Shown: positions 1,023 through 28,601, counted from the first letter of the stretch. The stretch is DNA of 64,000 nt from IMGVR_UViG_3300035698_022190:146209-210208, one strand, 5' to 3'. A program made the numbers and translations. The notes: a model not told the origin generated them from the sequence alone.

Positions 1023-1364
1023 TTACTGACCTATTTTACTTATTAGATCAAGTGCTTCTTCATTAGCAGCTAGTCTATGTGCGGCATCAACTTTTCTCAT
1101 ATCTTGTCCACATCCACATGGACACTCAAAGAATGTAGCCCATACTTCAGGGAAACACCTTTGACAAAAACTATAGCCTGTGTAGATCCTACGTACTTCG
1201 TCGTAACCTCGCTCGGTAACCTCATGATCTTGATCATGAAGTCTCCGGCCACAACAGGTCGTGCCTAAGTGATCTTCATCTCTACTTAGCATTGTAGCGG
1301 GCGTAGATTTATGTACTTTTCTTAATCCGAAAGGTATCCAGAGTCTGTCAAGAGGTTGCTTCAT
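1023..1364 (-). CDS. Hypothetical Cys-rich (zinc-binding) phage protein
   Basis: CxxC, CPCGC motifs; start overlaps upstream stop (ATGA). Confidence 0.7.
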   Translation of the reverse strand: MKQPLDRLWIPFGLRKVHKSTPATMLSRDEDHLGTTCCGRRLHDQDHEVTERGYDEVRRIYTGYSFCQRCFPEVWATFFECPCGCGQDMRKVDAAHRLAANEEALDLISKIGQ

Positions 1365-1618
1365 AATGGCAATCTATTCTTTTGATATTCATCATAGCTC
1401 TCTTTCCATCCTAAGGCTTCTTTAGTAGTTTTAGCCTCCAGGTAAGTATTAAGGAATGATTCAATATCTTGCATCAATCCTGATTCGCCTTTAATGTCAT
1501 CTTCGAAACCGCTCTCCATAACTATATGAAGGACACTCTGGTTATTTGTGGAGAGCATTAAGTTATATATGTCTATGTGATCGATATTAACAAATGTGCC
1601 GGCTAAGTTAACTATCAT
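1361..1618 (-). CDS. Hypothetical protein (TGA stop in ATGA overlap)
   Basis: RBS-like GGAG upstream; coupled to both neighbours. Confidence 0.7.
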   Translation of the reverse strand: MIVNLAGTFVNIDHIDIYNLMLSTNNQSVLHIVMESGFEDDIKGESGLMQDIESFLNTYLEAKTTKEALGWKESYDEYQKNRLPL

Positions 1619-1973
1619 CTCTTAACTCCTTCAGCAGCATATCTGTAATGTTAATAACATCTCGTCTCTCTGCGTCTACATATATAATTTGATGTTCCAT
1701 CTCAATAATGCTCGGACAAGTGAATTGTAGTATACCAAATCCTTTGTCTACCATTTCTTCAATATCTTTGACCGAGAACCAGGATAATAGGCCAGCTTTA
1801 TCAGCTACTGCGGTTTTCCAGTTCTTGCCATCAGTTTGGTGGATTGGATCATAAGGCATTGGCAAATTAAGCAATCTGTCATCTGACAACTGCTCAAGTA
1901 CCAGTTTACCATCAATTTTTGTAGTCCACATTCCATTTGATTCATCTAAATGTTCTATTCTACACAACCTCAT
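1608..1973 (-). CDS. Hypothetical phage protein
   Basis: 121-aa ORF overlapping both neighbours in an operon. Confidence 0.7.
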   Translation of the reverse strand: MRLCRIEHLDESNGMWTTKIDGKLVLEQLSDDRLLNLPMPYDPIHQTDGKNWKTAVADKAGLLSWFSVKDIEEMVDKGFGILQFTCPSIIEMEHQIIYVDAERRDVINITDMLLKELRDDS

Positions 1974-2328
1974 CTCGTAATTCCTTATATTTACCGGCTA
2001 TTACTCCTAAGCGTTGCTTTTCAAGAGTAAAGCCATGTTCAGCAGGATTTTCTGTCATATATGTAGCTGCTAACTGCTCAGTAGCAAATACCTGAAAATC
2101 TGTATCTATTCCGTCCCAGCCCATATCAATATAGACTAACCATACTTCTTGGTGATAGGCTAATTGATGACTAGCACCAATTAATGCTACGTTTAGGCTG
2201 GATAAAGCTTTATCTTTGGCGTCTTTTAGTCTTTTATCACTCATACATTTTAAGCAAAGATCTTCAGACCACCACACTGCATTAGATATTGTACTGCTGC
2301 ATTCTCTGCAGATCTTTTCTTCTGCCAT
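1960..2328 (-). CDS. Hypothetical protein with N-terminal CxxC..CxxC; start reassigned to 2328
   Basis: AGGAGA RBS before MAEEKICREC; the longer ORF overlaps a tRNA-like gene. Confidence 0.7.
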   Translation of the reverse strand: MAEEKICRECSSTISNAVWWSEDLCLKCMSDKRLKDAKDKALSSLNVALIGASHQLAYHQEVWLVYIDMGWDGIDTDFQVFATEQLAATYMTENPAEHGFTLEKQRLGVIAGKYKELRDEVV

Positions 2329-2348
2329 TTGCGTCTCCTTTAAAATTG

Positions 2349-2414
2349 CTAAGTATGCCGGAATCGAACCGGCGTCACTCGTTTGTGAGTATATTACCCC
2401 TCTACCAATACTTA
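2349..2414 (-). tRNA. Minimal/degenerate tRNA-like RNA, no assignable anticodon
   Basis: Acceptor TAAGTAT/ATACTTA, T-arm GCCGG-TTCGATT-CCGGC, D-loop with GG; anticodon arm only ACTC-ACAAAC-GAGT; followed by CAA. Confidence 0.65.
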
Positions 2415-2462
2415 GGTTCATCTGGTCGCGAACCAGAGTCTTCTTTGACGTCAGTCAAAATT

Positions 2463-2578
2463 TTACGAGCATGCAAGTATGTGTTGGATCAGGGCACATT
2501 TAGCCGACATCCTAGGTCTCGACGTATTCTATCCGATGCACCTTGGATACATTGTATCCACGGCACTTGCGCCCGTAA
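2463..2578 (-). ncRNA. Structured RNA, unknown family
   Basis: Long closing helix TTACGGGC.GCAAGT/ACTTGC.GCTCGTAA with internal hairpins. Confidence 0.4.
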
Positions 2579-2600
2579 TAAGGCTATATTCCAAAATTTG

Positions 2601-2766
2601 TGACCAGTGGAGGATTTGAACCCCCGATTATAGAGACTAGTGAGTTTCGCTCTATTAGCCTGCTGCTTACTACGCAGCGCTACACTTGAATACCCGGCTC
2701 ACTACTATCGAATATTACCGTGCGAATGTTTTAAAGAGTCTCGCCCTCTAAAACATAAAACTGGTC
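2601..2766 (-). ncRNA. 166-nt expanded tRNA-like RNA
   Basis: Perfect acceptor GACCAGT/ACTGGTC, discriminator A then CAA; T-arm GGGGG-TTCAAAT-CCTCC; 13-bp hairpin in the D-arm position; branched interior. Confidence 0.7.
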
Positions 2767-2777
2767 ATTGCAATGTA

Positions 2778-2999
2778 TTATTTCTTCGGAGGAAGTCCAA
2801 GACTATCTTGACGCTCAAGATAATGTTCAAGGGCCTCCGTTACTACCCAGGAGAATCTTTTTGTGGTAAGACGTTTCCATCCGAATAGTCTCTTTAAAGA
2901 ATTCTTTAGAGCAGGCTCAATAGTACATTCCCACTCAACGAAGTCTCCATCGATCTCTACTTCTTTGATAATTTTAAAACTTCCTAACTTTTTCTCCAT
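2778..2999 (-). CDS. Small hypothetical protein embedded in the RNA cluster (possibly ribbon-helix-helix-like)
   Basis: AAGGA RBS; C-terminal SWVVTEALEHYLE helix. Confidence 0.6.
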   Translation of the reverse strand: MEKKLGSFKIIKEVEIDGDFVEWECTIEPALKNSLKRLFGWKRLTTKRFSWVVTEALEHYLERQDSLGLPPKK

Positions 3000-3033
3000 A
3001 TGAATATCCTTTAATTTAAAGTATTAGGAATAA

Positions 3034-3142
3034 GGCTTAACTTTTCACCGGCGACTTTCAGGATTCGAGTATGAAATGTCCCGCCCGACTTAGAGGGGCC
3101 TCCTTGCAATGATCAACCTGCACGAGCTATCTGGGTTAAGCC
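3034..3142 (-). ncRNA. 109-nt structured RNA, unknown family
   Basis: Terminal stem GGCTTAAC/GTTAAGCC, GC-rich interior, AT-rich flanks. Confidence 0.45.
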
Positions 3143-3162
3143 ATAAGTTCCTACGAAATTAA

Positions 3163-3431
3163 TTGAGACTGTCCCCGCCTGTCGGTCTTGGGTACAGTTG
3201 GACCGGCCTAGTTAGTGGCTAACTCGTAATACAGTATCGGCAATACCCCATCAGGGGTATCTGCTCTCTTCGGGTTCTCTATATAGGCTCAGTGTACAGC
3301 TATCTTCCGGACTCTGTACTCGATTACTCTATATATTTCCATCCCCGTCCTGTTAACTGAACAAAGGGGATCTGCACTAGGTTAGTATCTTACGGCCAGA
3401 TTCTGTTAGGCTACAATGCCTACAGTCTCAA
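3163..3431 (-). ncRNA. 269-nt structured RNA, unknown family
   Basis: 10-bp terminal stem TTGAGACTGT/ACAGTCTCAA and several internal helices; abuts the tRNA-Gln-like gene. Confidence 0.6.
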
Positions 3432-3436
3432 ATTTG

Positions 3437-3528
3437 ATGAATAGACAGGGTTCGAACCTGCATAGTACCGTTCAAAGCGGCGACATTTCCGAATGCACCT
3501 GCATAGTGCCATTTTATGCTACTATTCA
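3437..3528 (-). tRNA. tRNA-Gln(TTG)-like with an extra hairpin between D and anticodon arms
   Basis: Acceptor TGAATAG/CTATTCA (U1-A72); D-stem GCAT/ATGC; loop CT-TTG-AA in GCCG/CGGT; T-arm GCAGG-TTCGAAC-CCTGT; insert GCATT-CGGA-AATGT. Confidence 0.7.
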
Positions 3529-3531
3529 TTT

Positions 3532-3608
3532 TGGTATATGGGCCGCGTTGCAACCTCATGCATGCATACATGTGTATCCAAGCACAGGGACACATCCTTA
3601 CATATACC
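3532..3608 (-). ncRNA. 77-nt tRNA-His-like mimic lacking canonical D and T arms
   Basis: 8-bp terminal stem GGTATATG/CATATACC; hairpin GTGTCC-CTGTGCTT-GGATAC presenting CT-GTG. Confidence 0.4.
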
Positions 3609-3690
3609 GAGTTCGGGGCAGGCATTGAATGGACGAGTCCACTCTTACCGCCTCCACCATTCTCACCGAAGTGAAAATTTATTTGTAAAT

Positions 3691-3875
3691 TATTGTAGTG
3701 GGCAATCTGAGCTGCTCCGCTGTCACGGACACAGGCATATAATGTTCAGGGTGAATAATATACCAACAGGGTCTTATCCTATACTATGACCGACTCCCTT
3801 AATGAAACCGGCTTTTGTCCGCTGCAGAGTTAACTCGTTGCGGTTCTTGGCGGAAAATAGATTGACATTATAATA
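3691..3875. ncRNA. 185-nt structured RNA, unknown family
   Basis: Long closing helix plus TCCGCT/GGCGGA, CGGACA/TGTCCG and CTGCA/TGCGG; G-U pairs favour the plus strand. Confidence 0.4.
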
Positions 3876-3962
3876 TTGCTAGGGCACAACCCCTGCAGCT
3901 CGTACGATCGCTAGGAAGAGCGGCCTGCCGTTGGCCTATGAAGGTCCATTAATTGAATAGCG

Positions 3963-4120
3963 GACCCGCAACTGGGATCGAACCAGTGTCTCTCTTTTGA
4001 TCGGAATGACCTTTTGTGAGTTATTACATTCCTGATCCCATTTTCATGGGTGTCTCATCCTGCTCTAGTCACTAGGATAATGCTGTCGGAAGCAATTCCC
4101 AACATTTTGACTACGTGAAT
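3963..4120 (-). ncRNA. 158-nt expanded tRNA-like RNA
   Basis: T-arm ACTGG-TTCGATC-CCAGT; weak acceptor ATTCACG/TGCGGGT; D-stem TAGTCA/TGACTA with inserted hairpin. Confidence 0.55.
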
Positions 4121-4548
4121 TTTGTTTCCATATTAACATCCGTAGGTTTGTTCCTGGGCACGTATAAGTTTTACAAAATATACAGTGATTTGATGTTGCT
4201 CCTATTAGTGCGATACCTTTTACGCAAAGCGCCATGTTAATAAAACTATTCTTGATGAGATACGCTCATCTATTCTTTCTAACGTAGTAGTTGGTAGCCC
4301 GGTATACTTAATTGCTTCCAAGTTTGAAATTGTTCGCGAGGGCGGATTGATTCCCGAAGGGGTCACCGCCAACCTCCACCTCACCATACAGTCGCGTGAA
4401 CTGTACTTATGGTAAGACTTTGGATTCAAGTCGCCACCTGAATGCATGTGCTGCACTAGTTTGTTGCCAGCCAGCTTCTGCTTCTCACTTACGTTTAATA
4501 AAGGTTTTGTTCCGGTCTGTTGTTCAGTAGACATTATGGAACAGTTTT

Positions 4549-4556
4549 CTTATACC
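4549..4556 (-). promoter_or_regulatory. GGTATAAG motif heading the RNA operon (one of 17 copies, 4549-28537)
   Basis: Plus-strand CTTATACC/CTTATCCC at 4549, 6236, 6503, 7449, 7523, 8496, 15410, 18535, 20361, 20775, 21331, 23315, 24484, 27226, 27552, 27682, 28530. Confidence 0.75.
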
Positions 4557-4632
4557 AAAAAGAGCCCATAAAATTGAAAAACCCACTTCTAAGAAATGGG
4601 TGAAAGGAGGTCATTTTATGGGCCCAATAAAT

Positions 4633-4821
4633 CTAATGTTGTATAAGTTGATCCATAGTGAACTCGGTGTGGTGTTCACAGGTTCCTGCTTGTTTGCAGC
4701 TAGGGGGCAATGGAACTTTGCAATCCTTTGTAGTACATCTCAAACGACGTTTAAATTCTGCCTGTGTCATTATGTATACTATTACTTTTTCTTTCGGTTC
4801 GTTTGTAAATATATTAGTCAT
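4633..4821 (-). CDS. Small Cys-rich hypothetical protein
   Basis: 62-aa ORF with four Cys. Confidence 0.5.
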   Translation of the reverse strand: MTNIFTNEPKEKVIVYIMTQAEFKRRLRCTTKDCKVPLPPSCKQAGTCEHHTEFTMDQLIQH

Positions 4822-4843
4822 TCACTAGTGTTGATTTGTCTGT

Positions 4844-5245
4844 TTATATGTTGCTGAGAACTTGGTTACTTGACTCTGGTTGTAATAGAGTTTCTGTAAT
4901 AGGTTTATCATCAACTACGCCGACCTTGACTTTAGGGCCGGATTCTTTTAATTTTGCCTTCGAAGCTGTTTTAGTCTTCTTAGCGTCACGCTTTGTAATT
5001 AGATTGTCAAGAAAATCATTTATGTTAACTCCTTCTTTCTTTGGAGTGCCTAAAGTTTTGGCACGCCATTTATCAATAGCAGCTTGCGTGTGTAGATTTT
5101 GCGTGTCTTGACAGTTGAAACACAGCGTATCAGAAAGACCCATGGGTAGGGGTGATGTACACCCCGGTGCAATACATATATCGCGATTCTTGAACTCTGT
5201 CTGTGTCTCCACGTTAATTAATATGCGTTTTGGCTTATCGCTCAT
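4844..5245 (-). CDS. Hypothetical protein with N-terminal zinc finger
   Basis: CIAPGC..CFNC; AGGA RBS. Confidence 0.65.
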   Translation of the reverse strand: MSDKPKRILINVETQTEFKNRDICIAPGCTSPLPMGLSDTLCFNCQDTQNLHTQAAIDKWRAKTLGTPKKEGVNINDFLDNLITKRDAKKTKTASKAKLKESGPKVKVGVVDDKPITETLLQPESSNQVLSNI

Positions 5246-5307
5246 TTTCCTGTTTCCTGTTTTATAATTATTTGTTTCCCAATACTAAATCTGGATGTGT
5301 TAAAAGG

Positions 5308-6054
5308 CTACTTAGACTTACGCTTGGTCGTGGGTCTATCTTTCCCCACGTCGTTAGTCCTGGTAGTTGTTTTAGCGTTGCTGCTATTATTACTCCTTCT
5401 TTTATTGGAATCGCTTGCCACGGAATTCCCTTTCGTCCTTGCGCTTTTCGACACTCGTTTATTTGGTGTCTTATTAATCCTATCCTCTTCCGAGCGTTTC
5501 CGCACTCTGGGCAATACTTTGCGTATGGTCCCTTCTTTTGACGAGGGCACCCTCTTGCTTCGCACAATGGGCTTCCTTTTTTCGCCTGTCTTTGTCGGCG
5601 TTGCTCTCGAAGGTATGCTTTTGCGCCCTTCTTTGATCCGAATAGTGCCATTATTGTTTTCTGGTTTATTTGTTGTCGATCGTTTGTAAGGACTACGCTT
5701 AGTCCAGCTGCGATCATATCTATTTTTATAAGGTTTCTTCTTTTTATACTTAAAGTAATGGTTATCATACCTATTGTAGGTGTTCCAATTGTAGTAACTT
5801 GAGGAATACCAAGGATAATTCCAGTCCCAACCATAATAGTTCACATAATAATAGCCATAGTGAGGGTTAAACTGGTAATAATTGTATGAATATCCCGGAT
5901 TAAAAGATAACGTAAAAGAATAGGACCCCAAATCGTAATCGACATAGTCATAGTGAGGTTTCTCTACGTATAGTCTATGTCGTGTGTTCATATTAGTGTA
6001 GCAACCCGTTAAAAACAGTATTGCCATCATAAGTGTAATTAGTCTGTATTTCAT
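5308..6054 (-). CDS. Lipoprotein, Tyr/Asn-rich with basic disordered tail
   Basis: Signal peptide ending in LTGC lipobox; sigma54-type motif upstream. Confidence 0.7.
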   Translation of the reverse strand: MKYRLITLMMAILFLTGCYTNMNTRHRLYVEKPHYDYVDYDLGSYSFTLSFNPGYSYNYYQFNPHYGYYYVNYYGWDWNYPWYSSSYYNWNTYNRYDNHYFKYKKKKPYKNRYDRSWTKRSPYKRSTTNKPENNNGTIRIKEGRKSIPSRATPTKTGEKRKPIVRSKRVPSSKEGTIRKVLPRVRKRSEEDRINKTPNKRVSKSARTKGNSVASDSNKRRSNNSSNAKTTTRTNDVGKDRPTTKRKSK

Positions 6055-6090
6055 ATATATGTGTCCTGATTTATATCATAATATACTATA

Positions 6091-6111
6091 TATAGTACAA
6101 AAACTGTGCCA
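6091..6111 (-). promoter_or_regulatory. Sigma54-like -24/-12 promoter
   Basis: TGGCACAGTTTTTGTACTATA, identical to 30228-30248. Confidence 0.6.
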
Positions 6112-6517
6112 AATACTTAAATATAATAATATCAGTATATTCAGATTAAAATTCCAAGATTAGTGTCTAAATAGTATACATTAAATTGTATACTAAGTAA
6201 ACAGTGACGAATTTTAACGAGATTAGTGCGTACTTCTTATACCGGAAAGTGTAAAAAAATTGGCGTGTAATAACAAGTATTACTAATGGCTTATCTTGTA
6301 TCAGCCCTCTTACTCTAGTCGTTACCTCATAATAATAAGAACCCCTTCTTATTAATTAAAGTAATATAGCTCCTGTATTAAGGGAATTATATGACTGGAA
6401 AGATTGTTCTCCTTCGTGGAAAACAAGTCTAGTTGTTCTTCGTGTTTATCATCCAAGACGCCACCTGATAATTTTGAAGGTCGTTAACCTTCTTGCACAA
6501 TTCTTATACCAGAATAC

Positions 6518-7156
6518 CTACTTTTTACGCTTTTTTGAGGGCTTAGAGGTGTTGAAGACTTTTTTCCACCAATTATTGGCGTATCCCCGTCTTCTGTGGA
6601 AGGGCGTGGGTCCCACTGTGTTGAGGAGCTTCTTGTCATGAGCCCTGATTAACCCTTTACTAAAGTTGGGCGCAAAATCAGGGTAAAGTGCGGCAAAGCC
6701 ATGAAACAGGGCATCAGCGGTTACTTTAGCATGAATTGATGCTGCCCATACCCAAGCATCTCCACCGGTTATGCTTTTTACGCTGAAATTGGGGTGAAAT
6801 TCGCTAGAAAAGGGTTTAGCTAAGGATTCATCAGCATGAAGCTCTATTTTGCCCGTACGAAGCCGCCTAGGCAGGGATTGAATAATTCTACGTACTGCTT
6901 CAGCTGCAGCCTGATTACGAGCGCGATATACCCCGAATCGCTCAATATCTGAGGGCATTGCTAAAGAAATTACATAATGACCTATTTGAGTAAGGCTATT
7001 AAATAATTCTACTCTAGCTGCTGAGTTGATAGCCTTTGAGTCTCTGATGTTTGATGGAAGTGTGGTGCGAGTTGGACGAAGGATATATGCCGCACATACA
7101 CAGGGGCCTGCCATAGATGGGCTATAGTTTGCTTCATCGAGTCCTATAATTACCAT
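6518..7156 (-). CDS. rnhB: Ribonuclease HII
   Basis: IIGLDEA..AGP, RDSK, AASIHAKV, GPTPFHRR motifs. Confidence 0.85.
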   Translation of the reverse strand: MVIIGLDEANYSPSMAGPCVCAAYILRPTRTTLPSNIRDSKAINSAARVELFNSLTQIGHYVISLAMPSDIERFGVYRARNQAAAEAVRRIIQSLPRRLRTGKIELHADESLAKPFSSEFHPNFSVKSITGGDAWVWAASIHAKVTADALFHGFAALYPDFAPNFSKGLIRAHDKKLLNTVGPTPFHRRRGYANNWWKKVFNTSKPSKKRKK

Positions 7157-7204
7157 ACCTAAATATAAGTTAAAAGAATAGTATTACCTATTCTTTTTTA
7201 GTCG

Positions 7205-7414
7205 CTAGGTGAGGTCTAGACGTCGAGAAGGCTTTTGCATATACTGCCATACATCTGGCGTAGTGTGCTTTACAGCCCCTTTACAGTCACAACATACTTT
7301 AGCATCAGACTCACGAGTAAAAAAGGGTGAATCTCCGCTACACACTGGGTCCGGTTCTTTATAAAACGGTTCTCCGCAAGATGTGCAGATATTTACTTTT
7401 GTGTTATTAGCCAT
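7205..7414 (-). CDS. Small zinc-ribbon protein
   Basis: CTSCG..CCDC; AGGAG RBS. Confidence 0.6.
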   Translation of the reverse strand: MANNTKVNICTSCGEPFYKEPDPVCSGDSPFFTRESDAKVCCDCKGAVKHTTPDVWQYMQKPSRRLDLT

Positions 7415-7558
7415 GGGGAAAACTCCTTTACTAGTTTAGGTTACTGTTCTTATCCCAAATTTTAAGCTAAAAGAGTCAAGTTCCCAGAGGGAATTATGTG
7501 ACTTACGTTCTACGTTATTGTTCTTATACCAATAACTTATATGTAAGCCACATAATAA

Positions 7559-7978
7559 TTAACTTGAGAGCTTTTCCTTTTCAACGTCCCATTTATGCTT
7601 CAACACAATCTTATAATGGTTAAACTGTTCATGACAATATGTACCCAGATTCATAATACCCCACCCTAAGAAAGGCCAGACACATGATCCTATAACTAAT
7701 AACATTATTAACGCTAATGTTAGGTCCTCTACCCTGTGTGAATGTAGGCTTGGATCTGTGTTTATTTCGATCATCTTAGCTACGCCCCAAATAAAAACTA
7801 GACCCGCAAAAATTCCACCAAAGGCTGTTCCTGTTCGCATATTGCGTTGGTCTTTGGAACCTCTCTGGTAGTTTCCGTCAGGCTTCCAAAGCCAAGCATG
7901 AATAGTGTGAAACCACTCTACCACAAGGGTAAGAGCTAAGTTCTTTGCTACATCTGTATTAGTCGGAGTTGCTGTCAT
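7559..7978 (-). CDS. Two-TM membrane protein
   Basis: Two hydrophobic segments; architecture like the adjacent gene. Confidence 0.7.
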   Translation of the reverse strand: MTATPTNTDVAKNLALTLVVEWFHTIHAWLWKPDGNYQRGSKDQRNMRTGTAFGGIFAGLVFIWGVAKMIEINTDPSLHSHRVEDLTLALIMLLVIGSCVWPFLGWGIMNLGTYCHEQFNHYKIVLKHKWDVEKEKLSS

Positions 7979-22058: not shown

Positions 22059-22250
22059 TTACATTAAACTAATACCTTCTGACATCTTTAATTCAACAAT
22101 GAGTGCAATGGCTACAGCCATTTGACAAATTAAAGCTATTGCCAAAAGCATCATAACTACCTTCCAATATTCACCGTCCCATTGATCCCACATTACAAAC
22201 CCCAGCGCAAGCAAAACAGCAACTAGGGCAATTACTGATATTATTGCCAT
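22059..22250 (-). CDS. Small two-TM membrane protein
   Basis: Hydrophobic throughout. Confidence 0.6.
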   Translation of the reverse strand: MAIISVIALVAVLLALGFVMWDQWDGEYWKVVMMLLAIALICQMAVAIALIVELKMSEGISLM

Positions 22251-22649
22251 TTAAAATTCCTTCCCGTCGCTTTCGATCCAGCGTTGATTGCTCACAGCAG
22301 CATGCCGAACTATAGCTTCCTGAGCTTCTTCACGGGTATTATAACGCACTTCATCAACAGCGTTATTAGTATATTTAACTAATACCTTAAAAGTACCGTT
22401 GCCGAATTCATGTATGCTATACCCGTTGACGCTACAGTATGATGGTCGCTTTTTACTACCTTCGTTAACCGGGCCTTTTAAAATCCTGTGTACAGGATCA
22501 TTTACAGGATCATTTACAGTATCCTTTACAATATTATTGGGTTTATTAAATCGTCCGCTGTTGCCCTCGAAACCAGTAGGTGGTCCATAAAACAACATTG
22601 TTAGTCCCATTATTGCAAGCATTACAATAATCACTGTGCTTGTTTTCAT
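22251..22649 (-). CDS. Membrane-anchored hypothetical protein
   Basis: N-terminal TM; ATGA overlap with upstream gene. Confidence 0.65.
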   Translation of the reverse strand: MKTSTVIIVMLAIMGLTMLFYGPPTGFEGNSGRFNKPNNIVKDTVNDPVNDPVHRILKGPVNEGSKKRPSYCSVNGYSIHEFGNGTFKVLVKYTNNAVDEVRYNTREEAQEAIVRHAAVSNQRWIESDGKEF

Positions 22650-22849
22650 ATAGTTTTTCCTTTCTGTAGTATGCCATGTTTTTTAGCTAGGTTTAAAGCT
22701 TCGCCTGGACGAAACCGGGCCAACCGACTAACTCTGCCTAACAAATTTCGATTCAAATCATATTCATAGACCCTTCCATCGATTGAAAACTTAACGGCAT
22801 CTAGACCTAAATTGTGTTTTGCGGTGCCTATTAATACTATCTTAGTCAT
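22646..22849 (-). CDS. Hypothetical protein (TGA stop in ATGA overlap)
   Basis: AGGAGG RBS. Confidence 0.65.
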   Translation of the reverse strand: MTKIVLIGTAKHNLGLDAVKFSIDGRVYEYDLNRNLLGRVSRLARFRPGEALNLAKKHGILQKGKTI

Positions 22850-22994
22850 AAGGCCTCCTTGTTATTTTGTCAGTTCTGAAATAGCGCGTTCATGACGTAA
22901 ACGTGCGATCCCCCGCTCTTTTGGTGTAAGCTTCCAATTAGTCATGCGTTTTTTATTGTCACGCATTTGCTTCATTAACCGTGCAATTTTTTCC

Positions 22995-23249
22995 CTAGTC
23001 ATGTCTGTCCACCATTTCCAACTTTACATTACTTAAAACTCTGTTTGTATCTTCCCCATCAACTAACACACAAACGCTAAAGTATCCATCGCCTTTGTCC
23101 CGATAAACATTTCGGACCAAAGCTTCTTTCCCAATTAATCCGGTGCGTTCTGTATTGTTGGAAACATCTTTTTCTTCCAGTACTAAGAGAATAGCCTTAT
23201 CATTTCTTTTCATGACTAGTCTGTTAAAACTGCAACGAGTATTATACAA
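22995..23249 (-). CDS. Hypothetical protein
   Basis: ORF in operon; true start probably slightly upstream after AGGAG. Confidence 0.55.
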   Translation of the reverse strand: MYNTRCSFNRLVMKRNDKAILLVLEEKDVSNNTERTGLIGKEALVRNVYRDKGDGYFSVCVLVDGEDTNRVLSNVKLEMVDRHD

Positions 23250-23400
23250 AGTATAATTAGCATTATCAATTGCATATTTGCTCCTTTTGCTTTTAATTAA
23301 AGTTTCACATGTTTCTTATACCTAAAAACTCTTTAAATCAACACAATTTTTAAGCTAAAAAAAAGGACCGACTAGCGATCCTTTTTTAAACTAAAATTAA

Positions 23401-23742
23401 TTAGTAGCGGCTATCTACACCACAAAGCCTGTTGAACTCGGCAATAACAATTTTCTTGCCGGCGAATTCGCGTGCTTCTTCTAGGTAACCTTCAACGATT
23501 GGAATATGGGAAAGCATATCTCTTGAAAGAGGTATCGTTGTATAATTCAATGCACCCTTAATATTGAGGGTAGGTAGCTCTTCAATTTCTTTTGCAGCAT
23601 ACCAGCTTTCGATATCACGGGTTGACAGCTCACCACTGGAAATTCTCAGTGCGTCTGATAATACGGTGTTTTCACCTTCGTCTAGGTGTCCGAGGTAAGT
23701 CTTACCACTTACTTCGACTATAATAAGATTTTTTTTGGCCAT
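23401..23742 (-). CDS. Hypothetical protein
   Basis: AAGGA RBS; terminator downstream. Confidence 0.65.
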   Translation of the reverse strand: MAKKNLIIVEVSGKTYLGHLDEGENTVLSDALRISSGELSTRDIESWYAAKEIEELPTLNIKGALNYTTIPLSRDMLSHIPIVEGYLEEAREFAGKKIVIAEFNRLCGVDSRY

Positions 23743-23768
23743 CTTATATATCCTTTTATTTTATTGTT

Positions 23769-24443
23769 TTAGAATGTTTGTTTTCTAGGCGGTCTTTTGC
23801 TACCGGGCCTAGTTGGTCTTTGTTTGATGTCTCCTGCGAAGCGTATAGTATCGCGTGGCGCAATTTTCATGTCAAGTAGATGATCAATGTCTTTTTTGCA
23901 ATAAGCTTCCATAGATTCCATGGCAGCTCTACTTGGGCTTGGTGGATAGGGCATTCCGTCCGGATCCATTTCAAATCCACCAGCATGCTTTTGTAAAAGT
24001 TCGAAAGAATTTTCGCCAATAAAGCCGCCGTATTCGCCTGATTTAGAGTTTCCTATTTTAGGGGTTACTTTGTATCCGGGCTGTGAATGTCCCCCGAATC
24101 CTCCATTGTACTCACCGCGACATACAATCCTAACTTGAACATTAAAGTCCCTGCTAGCAATGCCTGAGCCACCATGCATACCCCTTACAATATCTCCTAC
24201 TTCAAACTCATAATCCAAATCGGGCTCATTGTTACGGCCTATAGAACGTATGTGCTCTTCGGATACGTAGAAACTATCATCATCATCATCTTCCCGTACT
24301 CCGTTTGAATCGCATGCATAACAAAGGTATTCGTCGTCTCCGTCTTTTTCTTCATTAATAATAACGAAATCGCCCTCATAATATATCTGATCATCATGTT
24401 CCTCAATGACCTCACAAACATCTCCAATATCAAATTTATCCAT
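23769..24443 (-). CDS. Acidic protein with two SH3/KOW-like modules
   Basis: FDIGDVCEV and FEVGDIVRG repeats. Confidence 0.6.
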   Translation of the reverse strand: MDKFDIGDVCEVIEEHDDQIYYEGDFVIINEEKDGDDEYLCYACDSNGVREDDDDDSFYVSEEHIRSIGRNNEPDLDYEFEVGDIVRGMHGGSGIASRDFNVQVRIVCRGEYNGGFGGHSQPGYKVTPKIGNSKSGEYGGFIGENSFELLQKHAGGFEMDPDGMPYPPSPSRAAMESMEAYCKKDIDHLLDMKIAPRDTIRFAGDIKQRPTRPGSKRPPRKQTF

Positions 24444-24588
24444 ATGGTTTTATCCTTAATTTAGATATTAAATAGATACTTTCCTTATACCCTAAAATTT
24501 AAAATTTAGTATAGGATACCTTAGACATTTTAAGATCCCGTCTAAGCTAAAAAACGGGCCAACTTCGACCCGTTTAATAATGATATCC

Positions 24589-25095
24589 CTAATGTAAGGG
24601 GAATGGCGATACAACAATTTCTGGTTCTAAATAAACTAACCGTGGGTTACTCTCGGCATCAAGCATCATCAACCAAGTTGCACTAGAGCTCGTTGGCATG
24701 AAGAGCCCATTAGGATCGGCCTGTGGTAGTATTTCAAAACCACCCTGGTAAGATCTTTTGGTTCTCATAGGGTTTGTGAACTGCGCGGAGAAAGGAACGC
24801 CATATCCTAGGCATTTACCAATATACATAAGTTTTCCCTGGTAATCGCTTTTGATATAAGCATAGCAAACTATATCTTCTTGATCTTGTAATTCATAGAT
24901 CATTTTCATTAGTTTACGTTGCTGGAAATTTACAATATTTGGCATCCCAATCTGACGTTGAGATTCGGCAAGTAATAATTCTGTTGCCTCTTCTTGGATT
25001 GAATCTGTATCTGAACTCATTTCGCATGTTTCTGCAGTGAATACAAAGTAACACAGTGTTACAAGCAGTACTGCATATAATGGACGTACCCTCAT
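24589..25095 (-). CDS. Conserved phage exported/lipoprotein-like protein
   Basis: Signal peptide; QADPNGLF..SSSATW..YLEP.I.VSPFPL. Confidence 0.7.
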   Translation of the reverse strand: MRVRPLYAVLLVTLCYFVFTAETCEMSSDTDSIQEEATELLLAESQRQIGMPNIVNFQQRKLMKMIYELQDQEDIVCYAYIKSDYQGKLMYIGKCLGYGVPFSAQFTNPMRTKRSYQGGFEILPQADPNGLFMPTSSSATWLMMLDAESNPRLVYLEPEIVVSPFPLH

Positions 25096-25427
25096 TAATA
25101 GCCTCTTGTTTTTACTAAGAAATCTCTTAGTGTTTCATTGGAAATGTCTTCAGCGTTTACATCTGCAATTTGCATTTTGATTGTCGCTTCAATGGCTTTC
25201 TTGCCATCATAATCAGTATCTTGCCATTCGCCATATAGCTTTCCTAGCAATTGTTGCTGACCATGAACATATGATTTTGTATTTTCGAAAACTTCTCTAC
25301 GGATGTTTTCTTTCTTTGGAGCATACCATTTAGTAAAACTTAGGTCCATGGCTCCTGAAATGAATAGTATAAGAAATAGGCCTACAATACAAAGTAGGAC
25401 AATTACCGTGATTTTAAACGGGCTCAT
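25095..25427 (-). CDS. Membrane-anchored phage protein coupled to the next gene
   Basis: N-terminal TM; RREVFENTKSYV; TAATG coupling. Confidence 0.7.
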   Translation of the reverse strand: MSPFKITVIVLLCIVGLFLILFISGAMDLSFTKWYAPKKENIRREVFENTKSYVHGQQQLLGKLYGEWQDTDYDGKKAIEATIKMQIADVNAEDISNETLRDFLVKTRGY

Positions 25428-25660
25428 CTATTTTCCTTTTTAATTAAGTTTCTTTTTGCACCTTCACAGAAAGGATGGTCTTGATTGCCGTGACACATTA
25501 CCCGCCAGAAACTGTGCGGATAGTCTTCATCATCCTTCATGTCTATTAATTTACAATAACTTCCTGCACCATCTCGTAGATAGTGTGGACAGCTCTCTAA
25601 ATTTAAAACTTTAGGCCGACGACCACCGGCCCTACTGTTTAAATTCCTGTGGTTTCCCAT
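25424..25660 (-). CDS. Small Cys-containing hypothetical protein
   Basis: GGAG RBS; four Cys. Confidence 0.55.
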   Translation of the reverse strand: MGNHRNLNSRAGGRRPKVLNLESCPHYLRDGAGSYCKLIDMKDDEDYPHSFWRVMCHGNQDHPFCEGAKRNLIKKENR

Positions 25661-25667
25661 AGTTCTC

Positions 25668-26204
25668 CTACTTTATAGTTATTATATCTTTTTCTAATAA
25701 TTCTTTCTGATACATCTTTACTCGATCATCCATCTTCCATTTGTCATATCTTCTGAGATAACTACTATTAAGCTGATTAGGCCCTATCTTTATCTCGGAA
25801 GCCACTACCACCTCTATATAATTACCAGGAATCATATATCCTTTTGTATGGCCCCCACGATAGTCGACGGCCAGGATATAATATTCTAGATCTATGCGTC
25901 TTAAATTTATCCAATCCTCGGCATCCTGTACATTAGTAAATATATGCCAACCCATCGGGTATTCAAGTTTTGACAGAAGGACGTCTATAGTGCTTTTTTT
26001 GGAATTAGCATTGGTTCTAAAATCTTTTTCATGTAGCCACCGTTGTATAAAAAGGGGCTTATTTATATCATAGTAAATTTCTGGAAAAGGTCGACCATGA
26101 CATGACCAAAAGACTTTAACACCAAAACCACTTATATTCATTCTGGTTTCAGTAATACTTTTTAAACTCATTTTATTTCCTATGAAATGCGGCGCCCACA
26201 TCAT
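25668..26204 (-). CDS. Hypothetical protein
   Basis: ORF in operon. Confidence 0.55.
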   Translation of the reverse strand: MMWAPHFIGNKMSLKSITETRMNISGFGVKVFWSCHGRPFPEIYYDINKPLFIQRWLHEKDFRTNANSKKSTIDVLLSKLEYPMGWHIFTNVQDAEDWINLRRIDLEYYILAVDYRGGHTKGYMIPGNYIEVVVASEIKIGPNQLNSSYLRRYDKWKMDDRVKMYQKELLEKDIITIK

Positions 26205-26223
26205 TGACGTAAGCGCCTGTTAA

Positions 26224-26658
26224 TTAATTAGTTATGATTTTACCGCCACGTACTAGATCAAGAAAATCTACGCTCAAGGGCACTTCCCCGGGATAGTCTT
26301 CCCAACGATCGGCCATTAAGGTAAGATGCTCTTCAGGAATATCGTGAACTCCTTGAAATTGTCCGGTACATTTCAAAACTTTAAGATTTGCATCATACTT
26401 TTTAGCGAGATCAATATATGTCTGCATTTCCCAAATTCTTGTAAAGGTGTTTGACACTACTACGTCCATATTAAATCTCAGGGCGGTTTCACAGGCCACG
26501 ATGCAAGCTTCTGCAACGTCTTTAATCTGTGAAGGGTCGAATTCATAAACACCGTCTCTGATAAAAAACATGTCCATCTCTAAGTGTAAACATTCAAAAG
26601 ATTTAGCCATTGTAGTTTTTCCACTACCAGATAATCCCCTGATGAGTGATAACTTCAT
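26224..26658 (-). CDS. P-loop kinase (AAA_33-like)
   Basis: IRGLSGSGKTT, VVVSNTF, HDIP..M..RWE. Confidence 0.85.
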   Translation of the reverse strand: MKLSLIRGLSGSGKTTMAKSFECLHLEMDMFFIRDGVYEFDPSQIKDVAEACIVACETALRFNMDVVVSNTFTRIWEMQTYIDLAKKYDANLKVLKCTGQFQGVHDIPEEHLTLMADRWEDYPGEVPLSVDFLDLVRGGKIITN

Positions 26659-26791
26659 GCAACCTCCTATGCTACAAAAGGTCCAAGAAAAAGCTTAGCG
26701 GCTAATATTATCAATCCCACAATTGTTACTAGAATCATAATATCTATAAAACCACGCCACTTTGTTGATTTTGGTTGTCCCACATATCCTC

Positions 26792-27199
26792 CTATTTTCT
26801 AATCATTGCAAAATATACTTTTATTTCATGTTGAAATATTTCAATTTTTGTAACAACATGGCCTTTATTTTTTATGTTAGCTAAAGCTCCAACATCTTCC
26901 CAGCTCAGTGCTTTGGAATAATCTCCATTAGTATTAAAGAGATTTGTCTTACAAATTACTTCACCAAGTTTGGCAGTTTTAGCAATTTCAATTTCGTCCA
27001 GGCTCGTCCATTTTCCTTGAAAATATAGCCCAAATAGGCCACATAGAATGGCAACACCCATGCCCCACCAAAGTACTGCAGGAAGCGGAGTAAAAGAATT
27101 TTCTACATGTGTCCAAACATATAAGATTATTCCAGTTGCTATGGCCACCATCGTTCCAATAAAGATATATTCATATTTTTTATATTGCTTTATAGTCAT
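26792..27199 (-). CDS. Two-TM membrane protein
   Basis: Hydrophobic segments. Confidence 0.65.
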   Translation of the reverse strand: MTIKQYKKYEYIFIGTMVAIATGIILYVWTHVENSFTPLPAVLWWGMGVAILCGLFGLYFQGKWTSLDEIEIAKTAKLGEVICKTNLFNTNGDYSKALSWEDVGALANIKNKGHVVTKIEIFQHEIKVYFAMIRK

Positions 27200-27274
27200 T
27201 TTTATTCCTTTTTTGTTATACCATTCTTATCCCAATTTTTAAGTTAAAAAAAAGGGAGCGAGGCCCCCTTTAAT

Positions 27275-27523
27275 TTATTGTTCTTCTTTGGCTGCAGCTA
27301 TTATTTCTTCCCTGTTTTCCCACATGATTGGTGCCCAGGTTAAAGTATATCTACAAAAAGTTCTTACAAATTTGTCGATACAGTTCCATCTTGTTTGTTC
27401 AATTCCACATTTTACCATTTCTCTGCGCACTATGGATCTCATGGATTTTTCGGATTGAAGCAACAATATCCAACCTAAGAGGACGTAAAGTATTACTATT
27501 GATAACAATATGTGTATTATCAT
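27275..27523 (-). CDS. Membrane protein; start reassigned to MIIHILL
   Basis: AAGGA RBS; the longer ORF overlaps the GGTATAAG motif. Confidence 0.55.
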   Translation of the reverse strand: MIIHILLSIVILYVLLGWILLLQSEKSMRSIVRREMVKCGIEQTRWNCIDKFVRTFCRYTLTWAPIMWENREEIIAAAKEEQ

Positions 27524-27708
27524 TTTAATTTCCTTTCTATTAAGTATTCTTCTTATACCCAATCTTAACGTAAAAGAGAGCATCACTGCTCTCTTTAATT
27601 TGTAAATATCTCACCAATATTTACAGAGTTCCCCATAATAACAAACAAAGACTATATATAACTATATAGCTTTACATAATTCTTATACCTAATTGCGGTT
27701 AAAAGTGT

Positions 27709-27855
27709 CTAATGAAAATAAAAGAAATATACAATAATAAAACTCAGGAGGGCGCATACCAAACATGGTAGAAGATGGGTGTATATAAATTTACGTCGGT
27801 CCCCAGTTCGGCGGCCGAAGTGTAAGTCAATGAACTTACATAAATAGTTCTTCAT
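27709..27855 (-). CDS. 48-aa membrane peptide, apparently leaderless
   Basis: TTGCTT-N17-TATATT-N5-ATG on the minus strand. Confidence 0.45.
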   Translation of the reverse strand: MKNYLCKFIDLHFGRRTGDRRKFIYTHLLPCLVCALLSFIIVYFFYFH

Positions 27856-27946
27856 AATTTAATATACACTTTAAATAAAATAAAAGCAAGTTTAAACGTT
27901 CTTAAACTAAAAGAAGAGTTTAACCTCTTCCTTTAAGATACATCTT

Positions 27947-28228
27947 CTAAAGTACTGGTGCATTACAATCTGGGCAGTGTTTCTTTGTCAAGCCCAGTCC
28001 AGATAGCCCATTCAAAAACTTATGTGTTTTTTCATGTTTTACCGTAATGGGCTGCCATGCGGTCGTACATAGCGTGCAAAAGAAAGCGTTTGCTCCCCTG
28101 TTAGTTTTTCTTGTACTCGATTTATTTTGTAAAATAGCCTTTGATGTGTTTTTCATACTTATAAGAAATTGACAAATTGTATTATTTGTGTCTACATTTT
28201 GTGGAAAGTGTTTTGCTTGTAAAGCCAT
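27947..28228 (-). CDS. Zinc-ribbon hypothetical protein
   Basis: CTLC..CPDC; GGAG RBS. Confidence 0.6.
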   Translation of the reverse strand: MALQAKHFPQNVDTNNTICQFLISMKNTSKAILQNKSSTRKTNRGANAFFCTLCTTAWQPITVKHEKTHKFLNGLSGLGLTKKHCPDCNAPVL

Positions 28229-28243
28229 GTTATCTCCTGTTTG

Positions 28244-28492
28244 TTATTTATGGGCAATTTGCTGTCCCGGACTTAGTTTTAATTGGGAAAGCTTTTCTTG
28301 TAACTTAATAAATTCTACATCTGTGAGATGGATATCTATCTCTCGATCAGCGGTAAGAACTGATAAAACAATGGCCGATCCTGTTACTTTGCAAACTTCT
28401 CGGCTGGTATTAATCTTTATTTTGTCAGCACAAATCAGTTCTTCTTTTCTTGTAATGACAGCACTTGGGGATTTTTTCTTGGACATAGGCAT
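28244..28492 (-). CDS. Hypothetical protein
   Basis: AGGAG RBS. Confidence 0.6.
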   Translation of the reverse strand: MPMSKKKSPSAVITRKEELICADKIKINTSREVCKVTGSAIVLSVLTADREIDIHLTDVEFIKLQEKLSQLKLSPGQQIAHK

Positions 28493-28601
28493 GCTCCTTT
28501 TAGGTTAATTTAAATGACTAGTTATAATTCTTATACCATTTATATTTTAAGAAAAAATAAAGAAAAGTTGCTTTTAAAGGTATTGTATGCTATATTTAGG
28601 T

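What the first reader, a model, noticed from the sequence alone, without database searches (positions are those of the whole stretch)
1361..28537. Two codes in one genome: TGA appears to remain a stop in minus-strand genes
Seen: minus-strand genes end at TGA in coupled overlaps (ATGA at 1361-1364 and 22646-22649; TTGA at 19398-19401). None of them needs read-through, even Trp-rich ones. Inference: the host uses the standard code and the phage switches code during infection, which would need a tRNA-Trp(UCA) and/or RF2 inhibition. No canonical suppressor tRNA or release factor is visible in this window.
Basis: partly seen in the sequence, partly recalled or inferred. Interest (0 to 1): 0.8.

Follow-up and report, generated by a model that had tools for sequence, protein, structure and literature searches.

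The report
Jumbo phage using two genetic codes
This salt-lake jumbo phage uses TGA as an ordinary stop in its block of small early-type genes but as tryptophan in its late and structural genes; this block-wise two-code layout is real here, but it is already described for other phages.

Summary
The window is the last 64 kb of a 210-kb IMG/VR phage contig from salt-lake and marine metagenomes.

- **Late block (plus strand, about 30.9-63 kb).** It carries 42 in-frame TGA against 145 TGG. These TGA align with Trp/TGG in 67 related phage loci (213 of 362 cells; Gly 2). Coding density rises from 0.83 to 0.96-1.0 under code 4.
- **Early block (minus strand).** It has no internal TGA in 133 genes (269 TGG), yet 28 genes end at TGA, 24 of them as ATGA. 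Sixteen ATGA are 4-nt stop/start overlaps, against none in the late block.
- **Homolog ends.** One in-window gene (25424..25660) and two genes just outside the window have homologs that end at the same column with TAA, TAG or TGA. The other three in-window cases are orphans.
- **Corrections.** The split follows gene module, not strand: plus-strand genes at 8.5-19.3 kb, and the capsid gene, also lack TGA. The TTGA at 19398 is not a shown coupling.
- **Machinery.** No tRNA(UCA), RF1 or TrpRS lies in the window or in the 39 kb upstream. A tRNA array starts at the edge of what I could fetch.

Host code and a timed switch remain inference. This matches the model of Ivanova, Yutin, Borges and Pfennig: a new member of a known kind.

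The parts
1..8400 (-). Early-type block 1: small, mostly orphan minus-strand genes. It continues at least 39 kb to the left of the window. Standard code suffices and TGA is used as a stop.
   Evidence: Pfam finds only RNase HII. The leftward continuation was read in L164, L165, L293 and L296.
1361..1618 (-). 85-aa gene ending at TGA. The ATGA at 1361-1364 overlaps the start of 1023..1364.
   Evidence: Its only homolog is a 99% identical copy.
1023..1364 (-). 113-aa downstream gene whose ATG forms the ATGA junction.
   Evidence: It is the first ATG in its frame, with 3 open codons upstream.
2349..2414 (-). tRNA-like element. The acceptor stem and T arm are good, but the anticodon loop has 6 nt. 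It has no UCA or CCA anticodon, so it is not a recognisable suppressor.
   Evidence: Rfam RF00005 scores 41.6 bits. Fold. ARAGORN finds it only at a relaxed threshold.
8450..19300 (+). Middle block, mostly plus strand, 13 genes. It has no in-frame TGA (40 TGG) and no TGA stops.
   Evidence: One methyltransferase domain.
19398..19901 (-). 167-aa orphan gene ending at TGA, with 5 TGG and no internal TGA. The next TAA/TAG lies 12 codons on. The TTG at 19401 opens only a 34-codon ORF.
19300..28720 (-). Early-type block 2, 23 minus-strand genes. Stops are TAA 14, TAG 6, TGA 3. There are 43 TGG and no internal TGA.
   Evidence: RadC and an AAA_33 kinase domain.
22646..22849 (-). 67-aa gene ending at TGA. 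The ATGA at 22646-22649 overlaps the start of 22251..22649 (132 aa).
   Evidence: No homolog in the phage collection.
25424..25660 (-). 78-aa Cys-rich gene ending at TGA. The ATGA at 25424-25427 overlaps the start of 25095..25427 (110 aa). The nearest homologs end within 0-2 residues of this point, with TAA.
30947..63009 (+). Stretch of the plus-strand block in which 17 of the 41 plus-strand-block genes (28.6-64 kb) carry in-frame TGA read as Trp: 42 TGA against 145 TGG. All of its genes end at TAA or TAG.
47215..49884 (+). Large terminase subunit, 889 codons with 8 in-frame TGA.
   Evidence: PHROG 675 and Pfam GpA_ATPase hit its first piece. TGA positions.
36549..39200 (+). 883-codon late gene with 8 in-frame TGA. 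Function unknown.
   Evidence: No family hit on its pieces.
51471..54371 (+). 966-codon gene with 3 in-frame TGA and an intein (Hint domain plus LAGLIDADG endonuclease). It is 76% identical over residues 16-966 to a relative in which TGA and TGG swap.
56180..57076 (+). Major capsid protein. It has no TGA (2 TGG).
   Evidence: PHROG 2522. 34% identity to the annotated capsid protein of Salmonella phage Arash.
60220..63009 (+). One 929-codon glycosyltransferase/methyltransferase gene. The TGA at 62488 is Trp (TGG in relative L002), not a gene end.

Best explanation
The window comes from a roughly 210-kb tailed phage that is written in two codes, module by module.

**Early-type modules.** These hold many small orphan genes and, further left on the contig, RNA-repair, NAD-salvage and nucleotide-metabolism genes. 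They are written in the standard code. TGA never occurs inside a gene. TGA ends about one gene in five, usually in an ATGA overlap that couples the stop of one gene to the start of the next.

**Late module.** This holds terminase, an intein-bearing protein, a DNA ligase, glycosyltransferases and many unknowns. It ends every gene with TAA or TAG and uses TGA for about 22% of its tryptophans.

**Most likely mechanism (inferred).** The host reads TGA as stop, so early genes are translated correctly by host machinery on entry. TGA-containing genes give only truncated products until a phage-made UGA-decoding activity builds up. That activity is most likely a tRNA(UCA) charged with Trp from the phage's tRNA array, possibly helped by interference with RF2. 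The recoded codon then acts as a translational lock on part of the late programme.

**Shown:** the two uses of TGA, their block-wise distribution, Trp as the meaning, and conservation of both uses in relatives.

**Inferred:** the host's code, the timing, and the decoding agent.
For: **TGA is Trp in late genes.**
- Against the syntenic relative L002, TGA and TGG swap at 15 or more aligned positions.
- Across 67 related loci, window TGA aligns to W in 213 of 362 cells and to TGA in 38. The rest are mostly L, F, I or Y; Gly appears twice. In-frame TGA of relatives aligns to window W 173 times.
- Density is 0.83 under code 11 and 0.96-1.0 under code 4 at 30.9-54.4 kb. A TAG-as-sense control gives no gain.

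**TGA is a stop in early genes.**
- 133 genes have 269 TGG and 0 internal TGA. Stops are TAA 85, TAG 20, TGA 28.
- 16 of 131 junctions are 4-nt ATGA overlaps, against 0 of 40 in the late block.
- RBS-like AGGAG or GGAG motifs lie upstream of these ATGs.

**Homolog ends.**
- The 256-aa gene at window -2979..-2209 ends at TGA. Its 66% and 54% identical homologs end one residue earlier with TAA and at the same column with TAG.
- The 74-aa gene at -3706..-3482 and its homolog both end at an ATGA.
- For in-window 25424..25660, the nearest homologs end 2 and 0 residues from the TGA, with TAA; one of them has a TAATG junction.

**Controls and context.**
- Off-frame TGA frequency is equal in all blocks.
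- A tRNA array exists on the early strand at about contig 107.4-107.6 kb.
- Published model: 10.1101/2021.08.26.457843 and 10.1101/2022.06.29.495998.
Against: - No tRNA(UCA), RF1 or TrpRS was found in the window or the 39 kb upstream. 107 kb of the contig is unread.
- The host is unidentified.
- Early or late timing rests on gene content alone. The promoter scan gave no signal.
- The lock is partial. The capsid gene and many neighbouring late genes have no TGA, while a DNA ligase and an ADP-ribosylglycohydrolase do.
- Three of the four in-window TGA-ending genes are orphans, so their ends rest on junction anatomy and statistics only.
Confidence: 0.72

Rival explanations
1. There is no timed switch. 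UGA is partly suppressed throughout infection, either by a phage tRNA made from the start or by naturally leaky host decoding. Early genes simply tolerate short C-terminal extensions, and late genes are made at reduced yield.
For: - Extensions beyond early TGA stops are short: median 9 codons, maximum 42.
- The tRNA array lies on the same strand as the early-type genes.
- The most abundant late protein, the capsid, avoids TGA.
Against: - Complete absence of internal TGA in 309 early and middle Trp codons, against 22% in late genes, is hard to explain if TGA were readable from the start.
- The extension lengths are what off-frame stop density predicts, so they give no sign of selection either way.
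Confidence: 0.15
2. The host itself uses code 4 (TGA is Trp genome-wide), as in Mycoplasmatota. The early ORFs that seem to end at TGA are really read through to the next TAA or TAG.
For: - In-frame TGA aligns with Trp.
- Read-through of early genes would add only 1-42 codons.
- No suppressor tRNA was found in 103 kb.
Against: - No internal TGA among 309 Trp codons of early and middle genes.
- Code 4 gives no density gain in those blocks.
- 24 of 28 terminal TGAs sit in ATGA.
- Homologs end at the same column with TAA or TAG.
- Late genes use TGA for only 22% of Trp, whereas code-4 genomes use it for 80-90% (figure quoted in 10.1101/2022.06.29.495998).
- Close relatives in the same clade have no in-frame TGA.
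Confidence: 0.06
3. TGA codes for glycine (code 25), and the phage infects Gracilibacteria or Absconditabacteria.
For: Code-25 phages exist.
Against: - Window TGA aligns to Gly in 2 of 362 cells and to Trp in 213.
- Code-25 phages carry in-frame TGA in about 90% of genes. Here it is 17 of 41 late genes and none of the 146 early and middle genes.
Confidence: 0.01
4. The in-frame TGAs are artefacts or defects: assembly errors, pseudogenes, selenocysteine, or programmed read-through at a few sites.
For: None beyond the presence of stops inside conserved genes.
Against: - There are 42 sites in 17 genes, all TGA and never TAA or TAG.
- The same usage appears in independent assemblies of relatives, where TGA and TGG swap.
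- Logan contigs from other runs reproduce the phage sequence.
Confidence: 0.01

Closest known systems
TGA-recoded gut phages described by Borges et al. (Agate and Jade members; bioRxiv 10.1101/2021.08.26.457843, later Nat Microbiol 2022)
   Same: - TGA aligns with Trp.
- In-frame TGA is concentrated in the structural and late module and absent from other modules.
- The genome is low in GC.
- Close standard-code relatives sit in the same clade.
- The proposed meaning is the same: a translational lock on late genes in a standard-code host.
- Many such genomes also lack a detectable suppressor tRNA; only 35% of code-4 phages had one.
   Different: - The habitat is salt-lake and marine, not gut.
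- It belongs to an unrelated clade of about 205-210-kb jumbo phages.
- TGA is not depleted as a stop in the non-recoded part: 21% of early genes, against 4 of 146 genes in the standard-code Agate relative quoted.
- No RF1/TrpRS operon was found in the 103 kb read.
crAss-like phages with block-wise genetic codes (Ivanova 2014 and Yutin 2021, as cited in Pfennig, Lomsadze and Borodovsky, Mgcod, bioRxiv 10.1101/2022.06.29.495998)
   Same: - The genome divides into blocks with different codes.
- The code change roughly follows the switch of coding strand.
- The standard-code block holds early genes and the recoded block holds late genes.
   Different: - Most of those cases are TAG to Gln.
- Their early block is usually 'dual-coded', giving the same proteins under either code. 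Here about a fifth of early genes would be extended into the next gene under code 4, so the early block is code-11-specific.
- Here plus-strand modules also exist that are TGA-free.
Phages of code-4 hosts (Mycoplasma, Spiroplasma) and code-25 hosts (Absconditabacteria)
   Same: TGA is read as an amino acid inside phage genes.
   Different: Those phages use the reassigned codon across nearly all genes (about 90% of genes in code-25 phages). Here it is absent from all 146 early and middle genes, and the amino acid is Trp, not Gly.
Salmonella phage Arash (OQ632216) and Vibrio phages D69, D148 and D181: the nearest cultured relatives
   Same: - The capsid protein is 31-34% identical over 97% of its length.
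- The terminase N-terminus is 39-40% identical.
- Genomes are 181-188 kb.
   Different: They are very distant. Their genetic code was not examined here, and no nucleotide-level similarity was found.

Membership tests
Alternatively coded (stop-codon-recoded) phage, TGA to Trp | In-frame TGA in conserved genes aligns with Trp in homologs | tested here: met
   213 of 362 aligned cells are W and 38 are TGA, and TGA of relatives aligns to window W 173 times.
Alternatively coded (stop-codon-recoded) phage, TGA to Trp | Coding density and ORF length rise when TGA is read as sense, but not in a control reassignment | tested here: met
   At 30.9-54.4 kb density is 0.83 under code 11, 0.96 under code 4 and 0.84 with TAG as sense. 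Median ORF length goes from 136 to 217 aa.
Block-wise dual-code phage (standard-code early block, recoded late block) | The recoded codon is confined to one set of modules and absent inside genes of the other | tested here: met
   0 TGA against 309 TGG in early and middle genes, versus 42 against 145 in late genes, p = 7e-20. Off-frame TGA is equal in all blocks.
Block-wise dual-code phage (standard-code early block, recoded late block) | The reassigned codon still works as a terminator in the standard-code block | tested here: met
   - 28 of 133 early genes end at TGA, 24 as ATGA.
- 16 junctions are 4-nt overlaps, against 0 in the late block.
- Homologs end at the same column with TAA, TAG or TGA for three genes, one of them in-window.
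- This is sequence evidence only. Termination itself was not observed.
Block-wise dual-code phage (standard-code early block, recoded late block) | A phage-encoded suppressor tRNA(UCA), often at the 5' end of the recoded block | tested here: inconclusive
   None was found in the window or in contig 107,322-146,208 by ARAGORN or Rfam. None was found in 53 relatives' late-block loci either. A tRNA array (Pro-UGG, Glu-UUC) begins at the edge of the last fetchable locus, and 107 kb remain unread.
Block-wise dual-code phage (standard-code early block, recoded late block) | Accessory code-change genes (RF1, TrpRS) | tested here: inconclusive
   No RF or tRNA-synthetase domain appears in any protein or piece searched. 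About half of the genome was not seen. These genes are also absent from most published recoded phages.
Block-wise dual-code phage (standard-code early block, recoded late block) | The host uses the standard code | not testable with these tools
   The host is unknown. The RadC scan of 185,579 species genomes gave mixed phyla at about 40% identity. The only support is indirect, from the early-gene pattern.
Phage of a code-25 host (TGA to Gly) | TGA aligns with Gly, and nearly all genes carry it | tested here: not met
   Gly in 2 of 362 cells. 17 of 187 genes carry TGA.
Phage of a code-4 host | TGA is used for Trp throughout the genome, as the majority Trp codon | tested here: not met
   No TGA in 146 early and middle genes, and 22% of Trp codons in late genes.

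The most novel reading that the evidence does not exclude
The early block is not merely compatible with the standard code; it depends on it. A fifth of its genes stop at TGA, mostly in ATGA couplings. Once UGA is read as Trp, early proteins would gain tails and stop/start coupling would break. The code change could therefore act as a two-way switch: it would unlock late genes and at the same time corrupt or shut down early ones. A related possibility is that the decoding agent is not a canonical tRNA(UCA). In addition, this clade, with recoded members at three or more places among standard-code relatives, offers a natural series for watching a code change arise outside the gut.
Probability: 0.12. 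Interest if true: 0.7.

Novelty: new member of a known kind. Interest (0 to 1): 0.35.

Why it matters
Annotation pipelines that apply one code to this genome will fail either way. Code 11 fragments terminase and about 16 other late genes. Code 4 runs about 28 early genes into their neighbours.

Biologically, the phage extends block-wise TGA recoding to an environmental (salt-lake and marine) clade of jumbo phages of about 205-210 kb. That clade holds both standard-code and recoded members, some with nearly identical capsid genes.

It is also a clear case in which the reassigned codon is still an ordinary, frequently used terminator in the other block. That sharpens the question of what happens to early-gene termination after the switch. 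It does not change the current picture of phage recoding.

Tried and rejected
- **Homolog test for 19398..19901.** Only the protein itself was found among 5.8 billion proteins and in IMG/VR. For 1361..1618 there is only a 99% copy. For 22646..22849 there is nothing in the phage collection. Their ends therefore rest on anatomy and statistics.
- **Synteny approach.** Relatives found through the 268-aa gene at 28795 (L083) and through RadC in metagenomes (L084-L092) share no TGA-ending early gene. L294 and L295 share only the query gene. The early region is highly variable.
- **Walking the contig for a suppressor tRNA.** All 8 viral scans are spent. I reached contig position 107,322, where a tRNA array starts. 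Exact-protein look-up gave only contigs under 1 kb. The contig ends in a short-unit repeat, so no terminal-repeat trick was tried.
- **The tRNA-like element at 2349-2414 as a hidden suppressor.** Rejected: it has a 6-nt loop and no UCA or CCA. The relics at 3436-3528 and 14442-14518 appear only at relaxed thresholds.
- **Sigma-70 promoter enrichment as a sign of early genes.** No enrichment was seen.
- **Backup stops after early TGA.** The next stop comes sooner than after TAA/TAG (median 9 vs 16 codons, p = 0.009). This is confounded by the frame of the next gene and matches off-frame stop density, so it is not evidence of selection.
- **Sequence context.** The +4 to +6 bases do not separate stop TGA from sense TGA. 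Only the -1 A, which marks the ATGA overlap, does.
- **Population variants at the TGA stops.** None are listed; the phage is at low depth and near-identical in the salt-lake runs.
- **Host from RadC best hits.** No signal.
- **ESM Atlas for the 726-aa middle-block protein.** Uninformative.
- **Error corrected.** The off-frame TGA line printed (27.1 vs 10.6 per 1000), and all, were wrong. A pandas attribute clash reverse-complemented the plus-strand genes. One search gives the correct values.

Full report
**Where the window comes from**

The window is the last 64 kb of IMG/VR contig IMGVR_UViG_3300035698_022190, which is 210,208 bp long. Window position x corresponds to contig position x + 146,208.

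Near-identical sequence occurs in salt-lake and marine metagenome runs. No deposited phage genome resembles it at the DNA level. The nearest cultured relatives are very distant: Salmonella phage Arash and Vibrio phages D69, D148 and D181. Their capsid proteins are 31-34% identical and their terminase N-termini 39-40% identical.

A capsid-protein scan of IMG/VR found 67 related loci, on contigs of up to 210 kb. This is therefore a widespread clade of environmental jumbo phages.

**Layout of the window**

- Minus-strand blocks of small, mostly orphan genes lie at 1-8400 and 19300-28720.
- A mostly plus-strand block lies at 8450-19300.
- One long plus-strand block runs from 28.6 kb to the window end.

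The last block holds a DNA ligase, an ADP-ribosylglycohydrolase/GDSL protein, the large terminase, an intein-bearing 966-codon gene, the major capsid protein and glycosyltransferases. I call the minus-strand blocks 'early-type' from gene content only. A sigma-70 consensus scan showed no enrichment anywhere.

**TGA is tryptophan in the late block**

With only TAA and TAG as stops, the stretch at 30.9-54.4 kb becomes almost fully coding. Density rises from 0.83 to 0.96-1.0, and median ORF length from 136 to 217 aa. Reading TAG as sense gives no such gain.

Seventeen of the 41 genes of the plus-strand block carry 42 in-frame TGA, beside 145 TGG. Terminase (47215-49884) and the gene at 36549-39200 have eight each.

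A syntenic relative, L002/L175, is 54-91% identical at the protein level across window 51-63 kb. It has TGG where the window has TGA, and TGA where the window has TGG, at 15 or more aligned positions. This shows that 60220-63009 is one 929-codon gene, not two.

Across all 67 related loci:
- Window TGA aligns to Trp in 213 of 362 cells and to TGA in 38. The rest are mostly Leu, Phe, Ile or Tyr, and Gly appears only twice.
- In-frame TGA of relatives aligns to window Trp 173 times.

Code 4 is therefore supported, and code 25 is excluded.

**TGA is a stop in the early-type blocks**

- The two ATGA are overlaps between the TGA of an upstream ORF (85 aa and 67 aa) and the first ATG of a downstream ORF (113 aa and 132 aa).
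- The TTGA ends the 167-aa ORF 19398..19901, but its TTG opens only a 34-codon ORF. Coupling there is unproven.

I read 39 kb more of the same contig to the left (L164, L165, L293, L296) to enlarge the sample. The same-strand block continues throughout. Over window plus extension, the early-type blocks have the following features:
- 133 genes, with 269 TGG and no internal TGA.
- Stop codons TAA 85, TAG 20 and TGA 28.
- Together with the 13 middle-block genes, 0 of 309 Trp codons are TGA, against 42 of 187 in the late block (Fisher p = 7e-20). In-window only, p = 5e-11.
- The trinucleotide itself is not avoided: off-frame TGA runs at 25-32 per 1000 positions in every block.
- Code 4 gives these blocks no gain in density.
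- 24 of the 28 terminal TGA are preceded by A, against 40 of 105 TAA/TAG stops (p = 9e-6).
- 16 of 131 early junctions are 4-nt ATGA overlaps, against none of 40 late junctions (p = 0.025). The late block uses TAATG and 8-nt overlaps instead.

The early genes are very variable. Three of the four in-window TGA-ending genes have no informative homolog. Three genes could be tested:
- **In-window 25424..25660** belongs to a small Cys-rich family with 34 hits. Its two nearest members end two residues before the TGA and at the same column, both with TAA. One of them sits in a TAATG junction with the next gene.
- **The 256-aa gene at window -2979..-2209** ends in an ATGA. It has homologs of 66% and 54% identity that end one residue earlier with TAA and at the same place with TAG.
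- **The 74-aa gene at -3706..-3482** and its 66% identical homolog both end in an ATGA, and their sequences diverge at once after it.

The relative's contig L167 also has four TGA-ending genes (three of them in 4-nt overlaps with the next gene) and no internal TGA. No homolog was seen to run past a TGA.

**Code-change machinery**

- ARAGORN finds no tRNA in the window.
- Rfam finds one tRNA-like element at 2349-2414(-). It sits between genes on the early strand and has a sound acceptor stem and T arm, but a 6-nt anticodon loop and no UCA or CCA. I do not regard it as a suppressor.
- No tRNA occurs in the next 38 kb to the left. At contig position about 107.4-107.6 kb, a tRNA-Pro(UGG) and a tRNA-Glu(UUC) appear. 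The array probably continues into the 107 kb I could not read.
- No release-factor or Trp-tRNA-synthetase domain was found in any protein or ORF piece searched.
- The 53 late-block loci of relatives contain no tRNA either.

The question for the whole genome stays open.

**Mechanism**

The best-supported reading is the published one. A standard-code host translates the early modules as written, with UGA terminating about a fifth of them. Genes with in-frame UGA yield full-length protein only once a phage UGA decoder accumulates.

What is shown is the dual use of the codon, its block-wise distribution and its meaning. The host's code, the timing and the agent are inferred.

The lock is partial. 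The capsid gene and most genes at 54.4-60.2 kb lack TGA, while a ligase gene has one.

A code-4 host is unlikely for three reasons:
- Early genes avoid internal TGA completely.
- Late genes use TGA for only 22% of Trp.
- Close relatives have no in-frame TGA.

A variant with constant, partial suppression cannot be excluded. I give it 0.15.

**Clade context**

Among the relatives, some loci are strongly recoded. For example, L217 and L224 rise from density 0.67 to 0.95 and have 52 TGA against 39 TGG. Others show no sign of recoding, such as L177 on a 204-kb contig, L181 and L228.

On a capsid-protein tree, the recoded members fall in at least three places among standard-code ones. L196 and L197 differ in code use although their capsid proteins are nearly identical. 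This is a single-gene tree, and code was judged on 10-20 kb per genome. It suggests, but does not prove, repeated gain or loss. Borges et al. describe the same pattern for the Agate clade.

**Comparison with what is known**

Block-wise use of two codes, with the change near a strand switch, early genes in the standard-code block, late genes in the recoded block, and a proposed switch during infection, is described in Borges et al. (10.1101/2021.08.26.457843) and in Pfennig et al. (10.1101/2022.06.29.495998). Pfennig et al. attribute the block structure to Ivanova 2014 and Yutin 2021.

The present phage is a new member from another habitat and clade. One nuance stands out. Pfennig et al. find the non-recoded block usually 'dual-coded', and the standard-code Agate relative in Borges et al. 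ends only 4 of 146 genes at TGA. Here TGA is a common terminator (21%) of early genes and is built into stop/start couplings. The two blocks are therefore truly incompatible under a single code.

**Verdict**

- Novelty: new member of a known kind.
- Interest: 0.35.

Noticed in passing
window 2349-2414 (-): Intergenic tRNA-like element (Rfam tRNA, 41.6 bits). It has a perfect 7-8-bp acceptor stem and T arm, but a 6-nt anticodon loop and a weak D arm. A strong RBS and ATG follow at about 2326, so the annotated start of ORF 1960..2421 is probably too far upstream.
   Followed up: partly
window 2600-4200, especially 3436-3528 (-): A 1.6-kb stretch with raised G+C (0.44) and no convincing ORF. It contains a second degenerate tRNA-like sequence: the acceptor, D and T arms are intact, and the anticodon region is disrupted by about 18 extra bases. 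ORF 3428..3625 lies over it and is probably spurious.
   Followed up: partly
window 51471-54371 (+): A 966-codon late gene carries an intein: a Hint domain from about residue 147, followed by a LAGLIDADG homing endonuclease. One of its three in-frame TGA lies just after the Hint match, before the LAGLIDADG domain. The host protein (extein) matches only PHROGs of unknown function.
   Followed up: partly
window about 63400-64000 (+): The contig ends inside a run of GGAACATC-type short repeats, in an ORF that runs off the window end (stop-to-stop frame from 63387). This is probably why the assembly stops here, and the genome may be incomplete at this end.
   Followed up: no
L296:20267-20424 (contig about 107.4-107.6 kb; minus strand in window orientation): Start of a tRNA array: tRNA-Pro(UGG) and tRNA-Glu(UUC). 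Both have unusual T loops (A at position 54), and ARAGORN misses the second at default settings. The array runs off the last locus I could fetch.
   Followed up: partly
L293, L165, L164 and L296 (contig 107-146 kb): The same-strand block left of the window encodes several functional sets:
- An RNA-repair set: RtcB, an RNA ligase, the RlaP nucleotidyltransferase and a second ATP-dependent ligase.
- NAD salvage: NAPRTase, NUDIX and an isochorismatase/nicotinamidase-like protein.
- Two radical-SAM proteins, ThyX, ClpP and an SPFH protein.
All are written in the standard code.
   Followed up: partly
L173-L240 (capsid-gene relatives): The clade mixes standard-code and TGA-recoded genomes, with TGA making up anywhere from about 0% to about 60% of Trp codons. 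On the capsid tree, recoded members sit in at least 3 places. L196 and L197 have nearly identical capsid proteins but differ in TGA use.
   Followed up: partly
L084 (Ga0307992_1014096): A 3.8-kb metagenome contig shares two genes at 100% protein identity with the window (RadC and 20449..20733). It then continues with 57-60% identical homologs of genes that lie 2-5 kb further on in the window. This shows mosaic rearrangement of the early region between related phages.
   Followed up: no
window 19297-19401 (-): A 34-codon ORF starting at the TTG of the TTGA encodes a peptide with a hydrophobic, membrane-helix-like stretch. I found no evidence either way.
   Followed up: no
window 56180-57076 (+): The major capsid gene has no TGA, and its L002 homolog showed none in the alignment, although neighbouring late genes carry them. 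The most highly expressed late gene may avoid the recoded codon.
   Followed up: no
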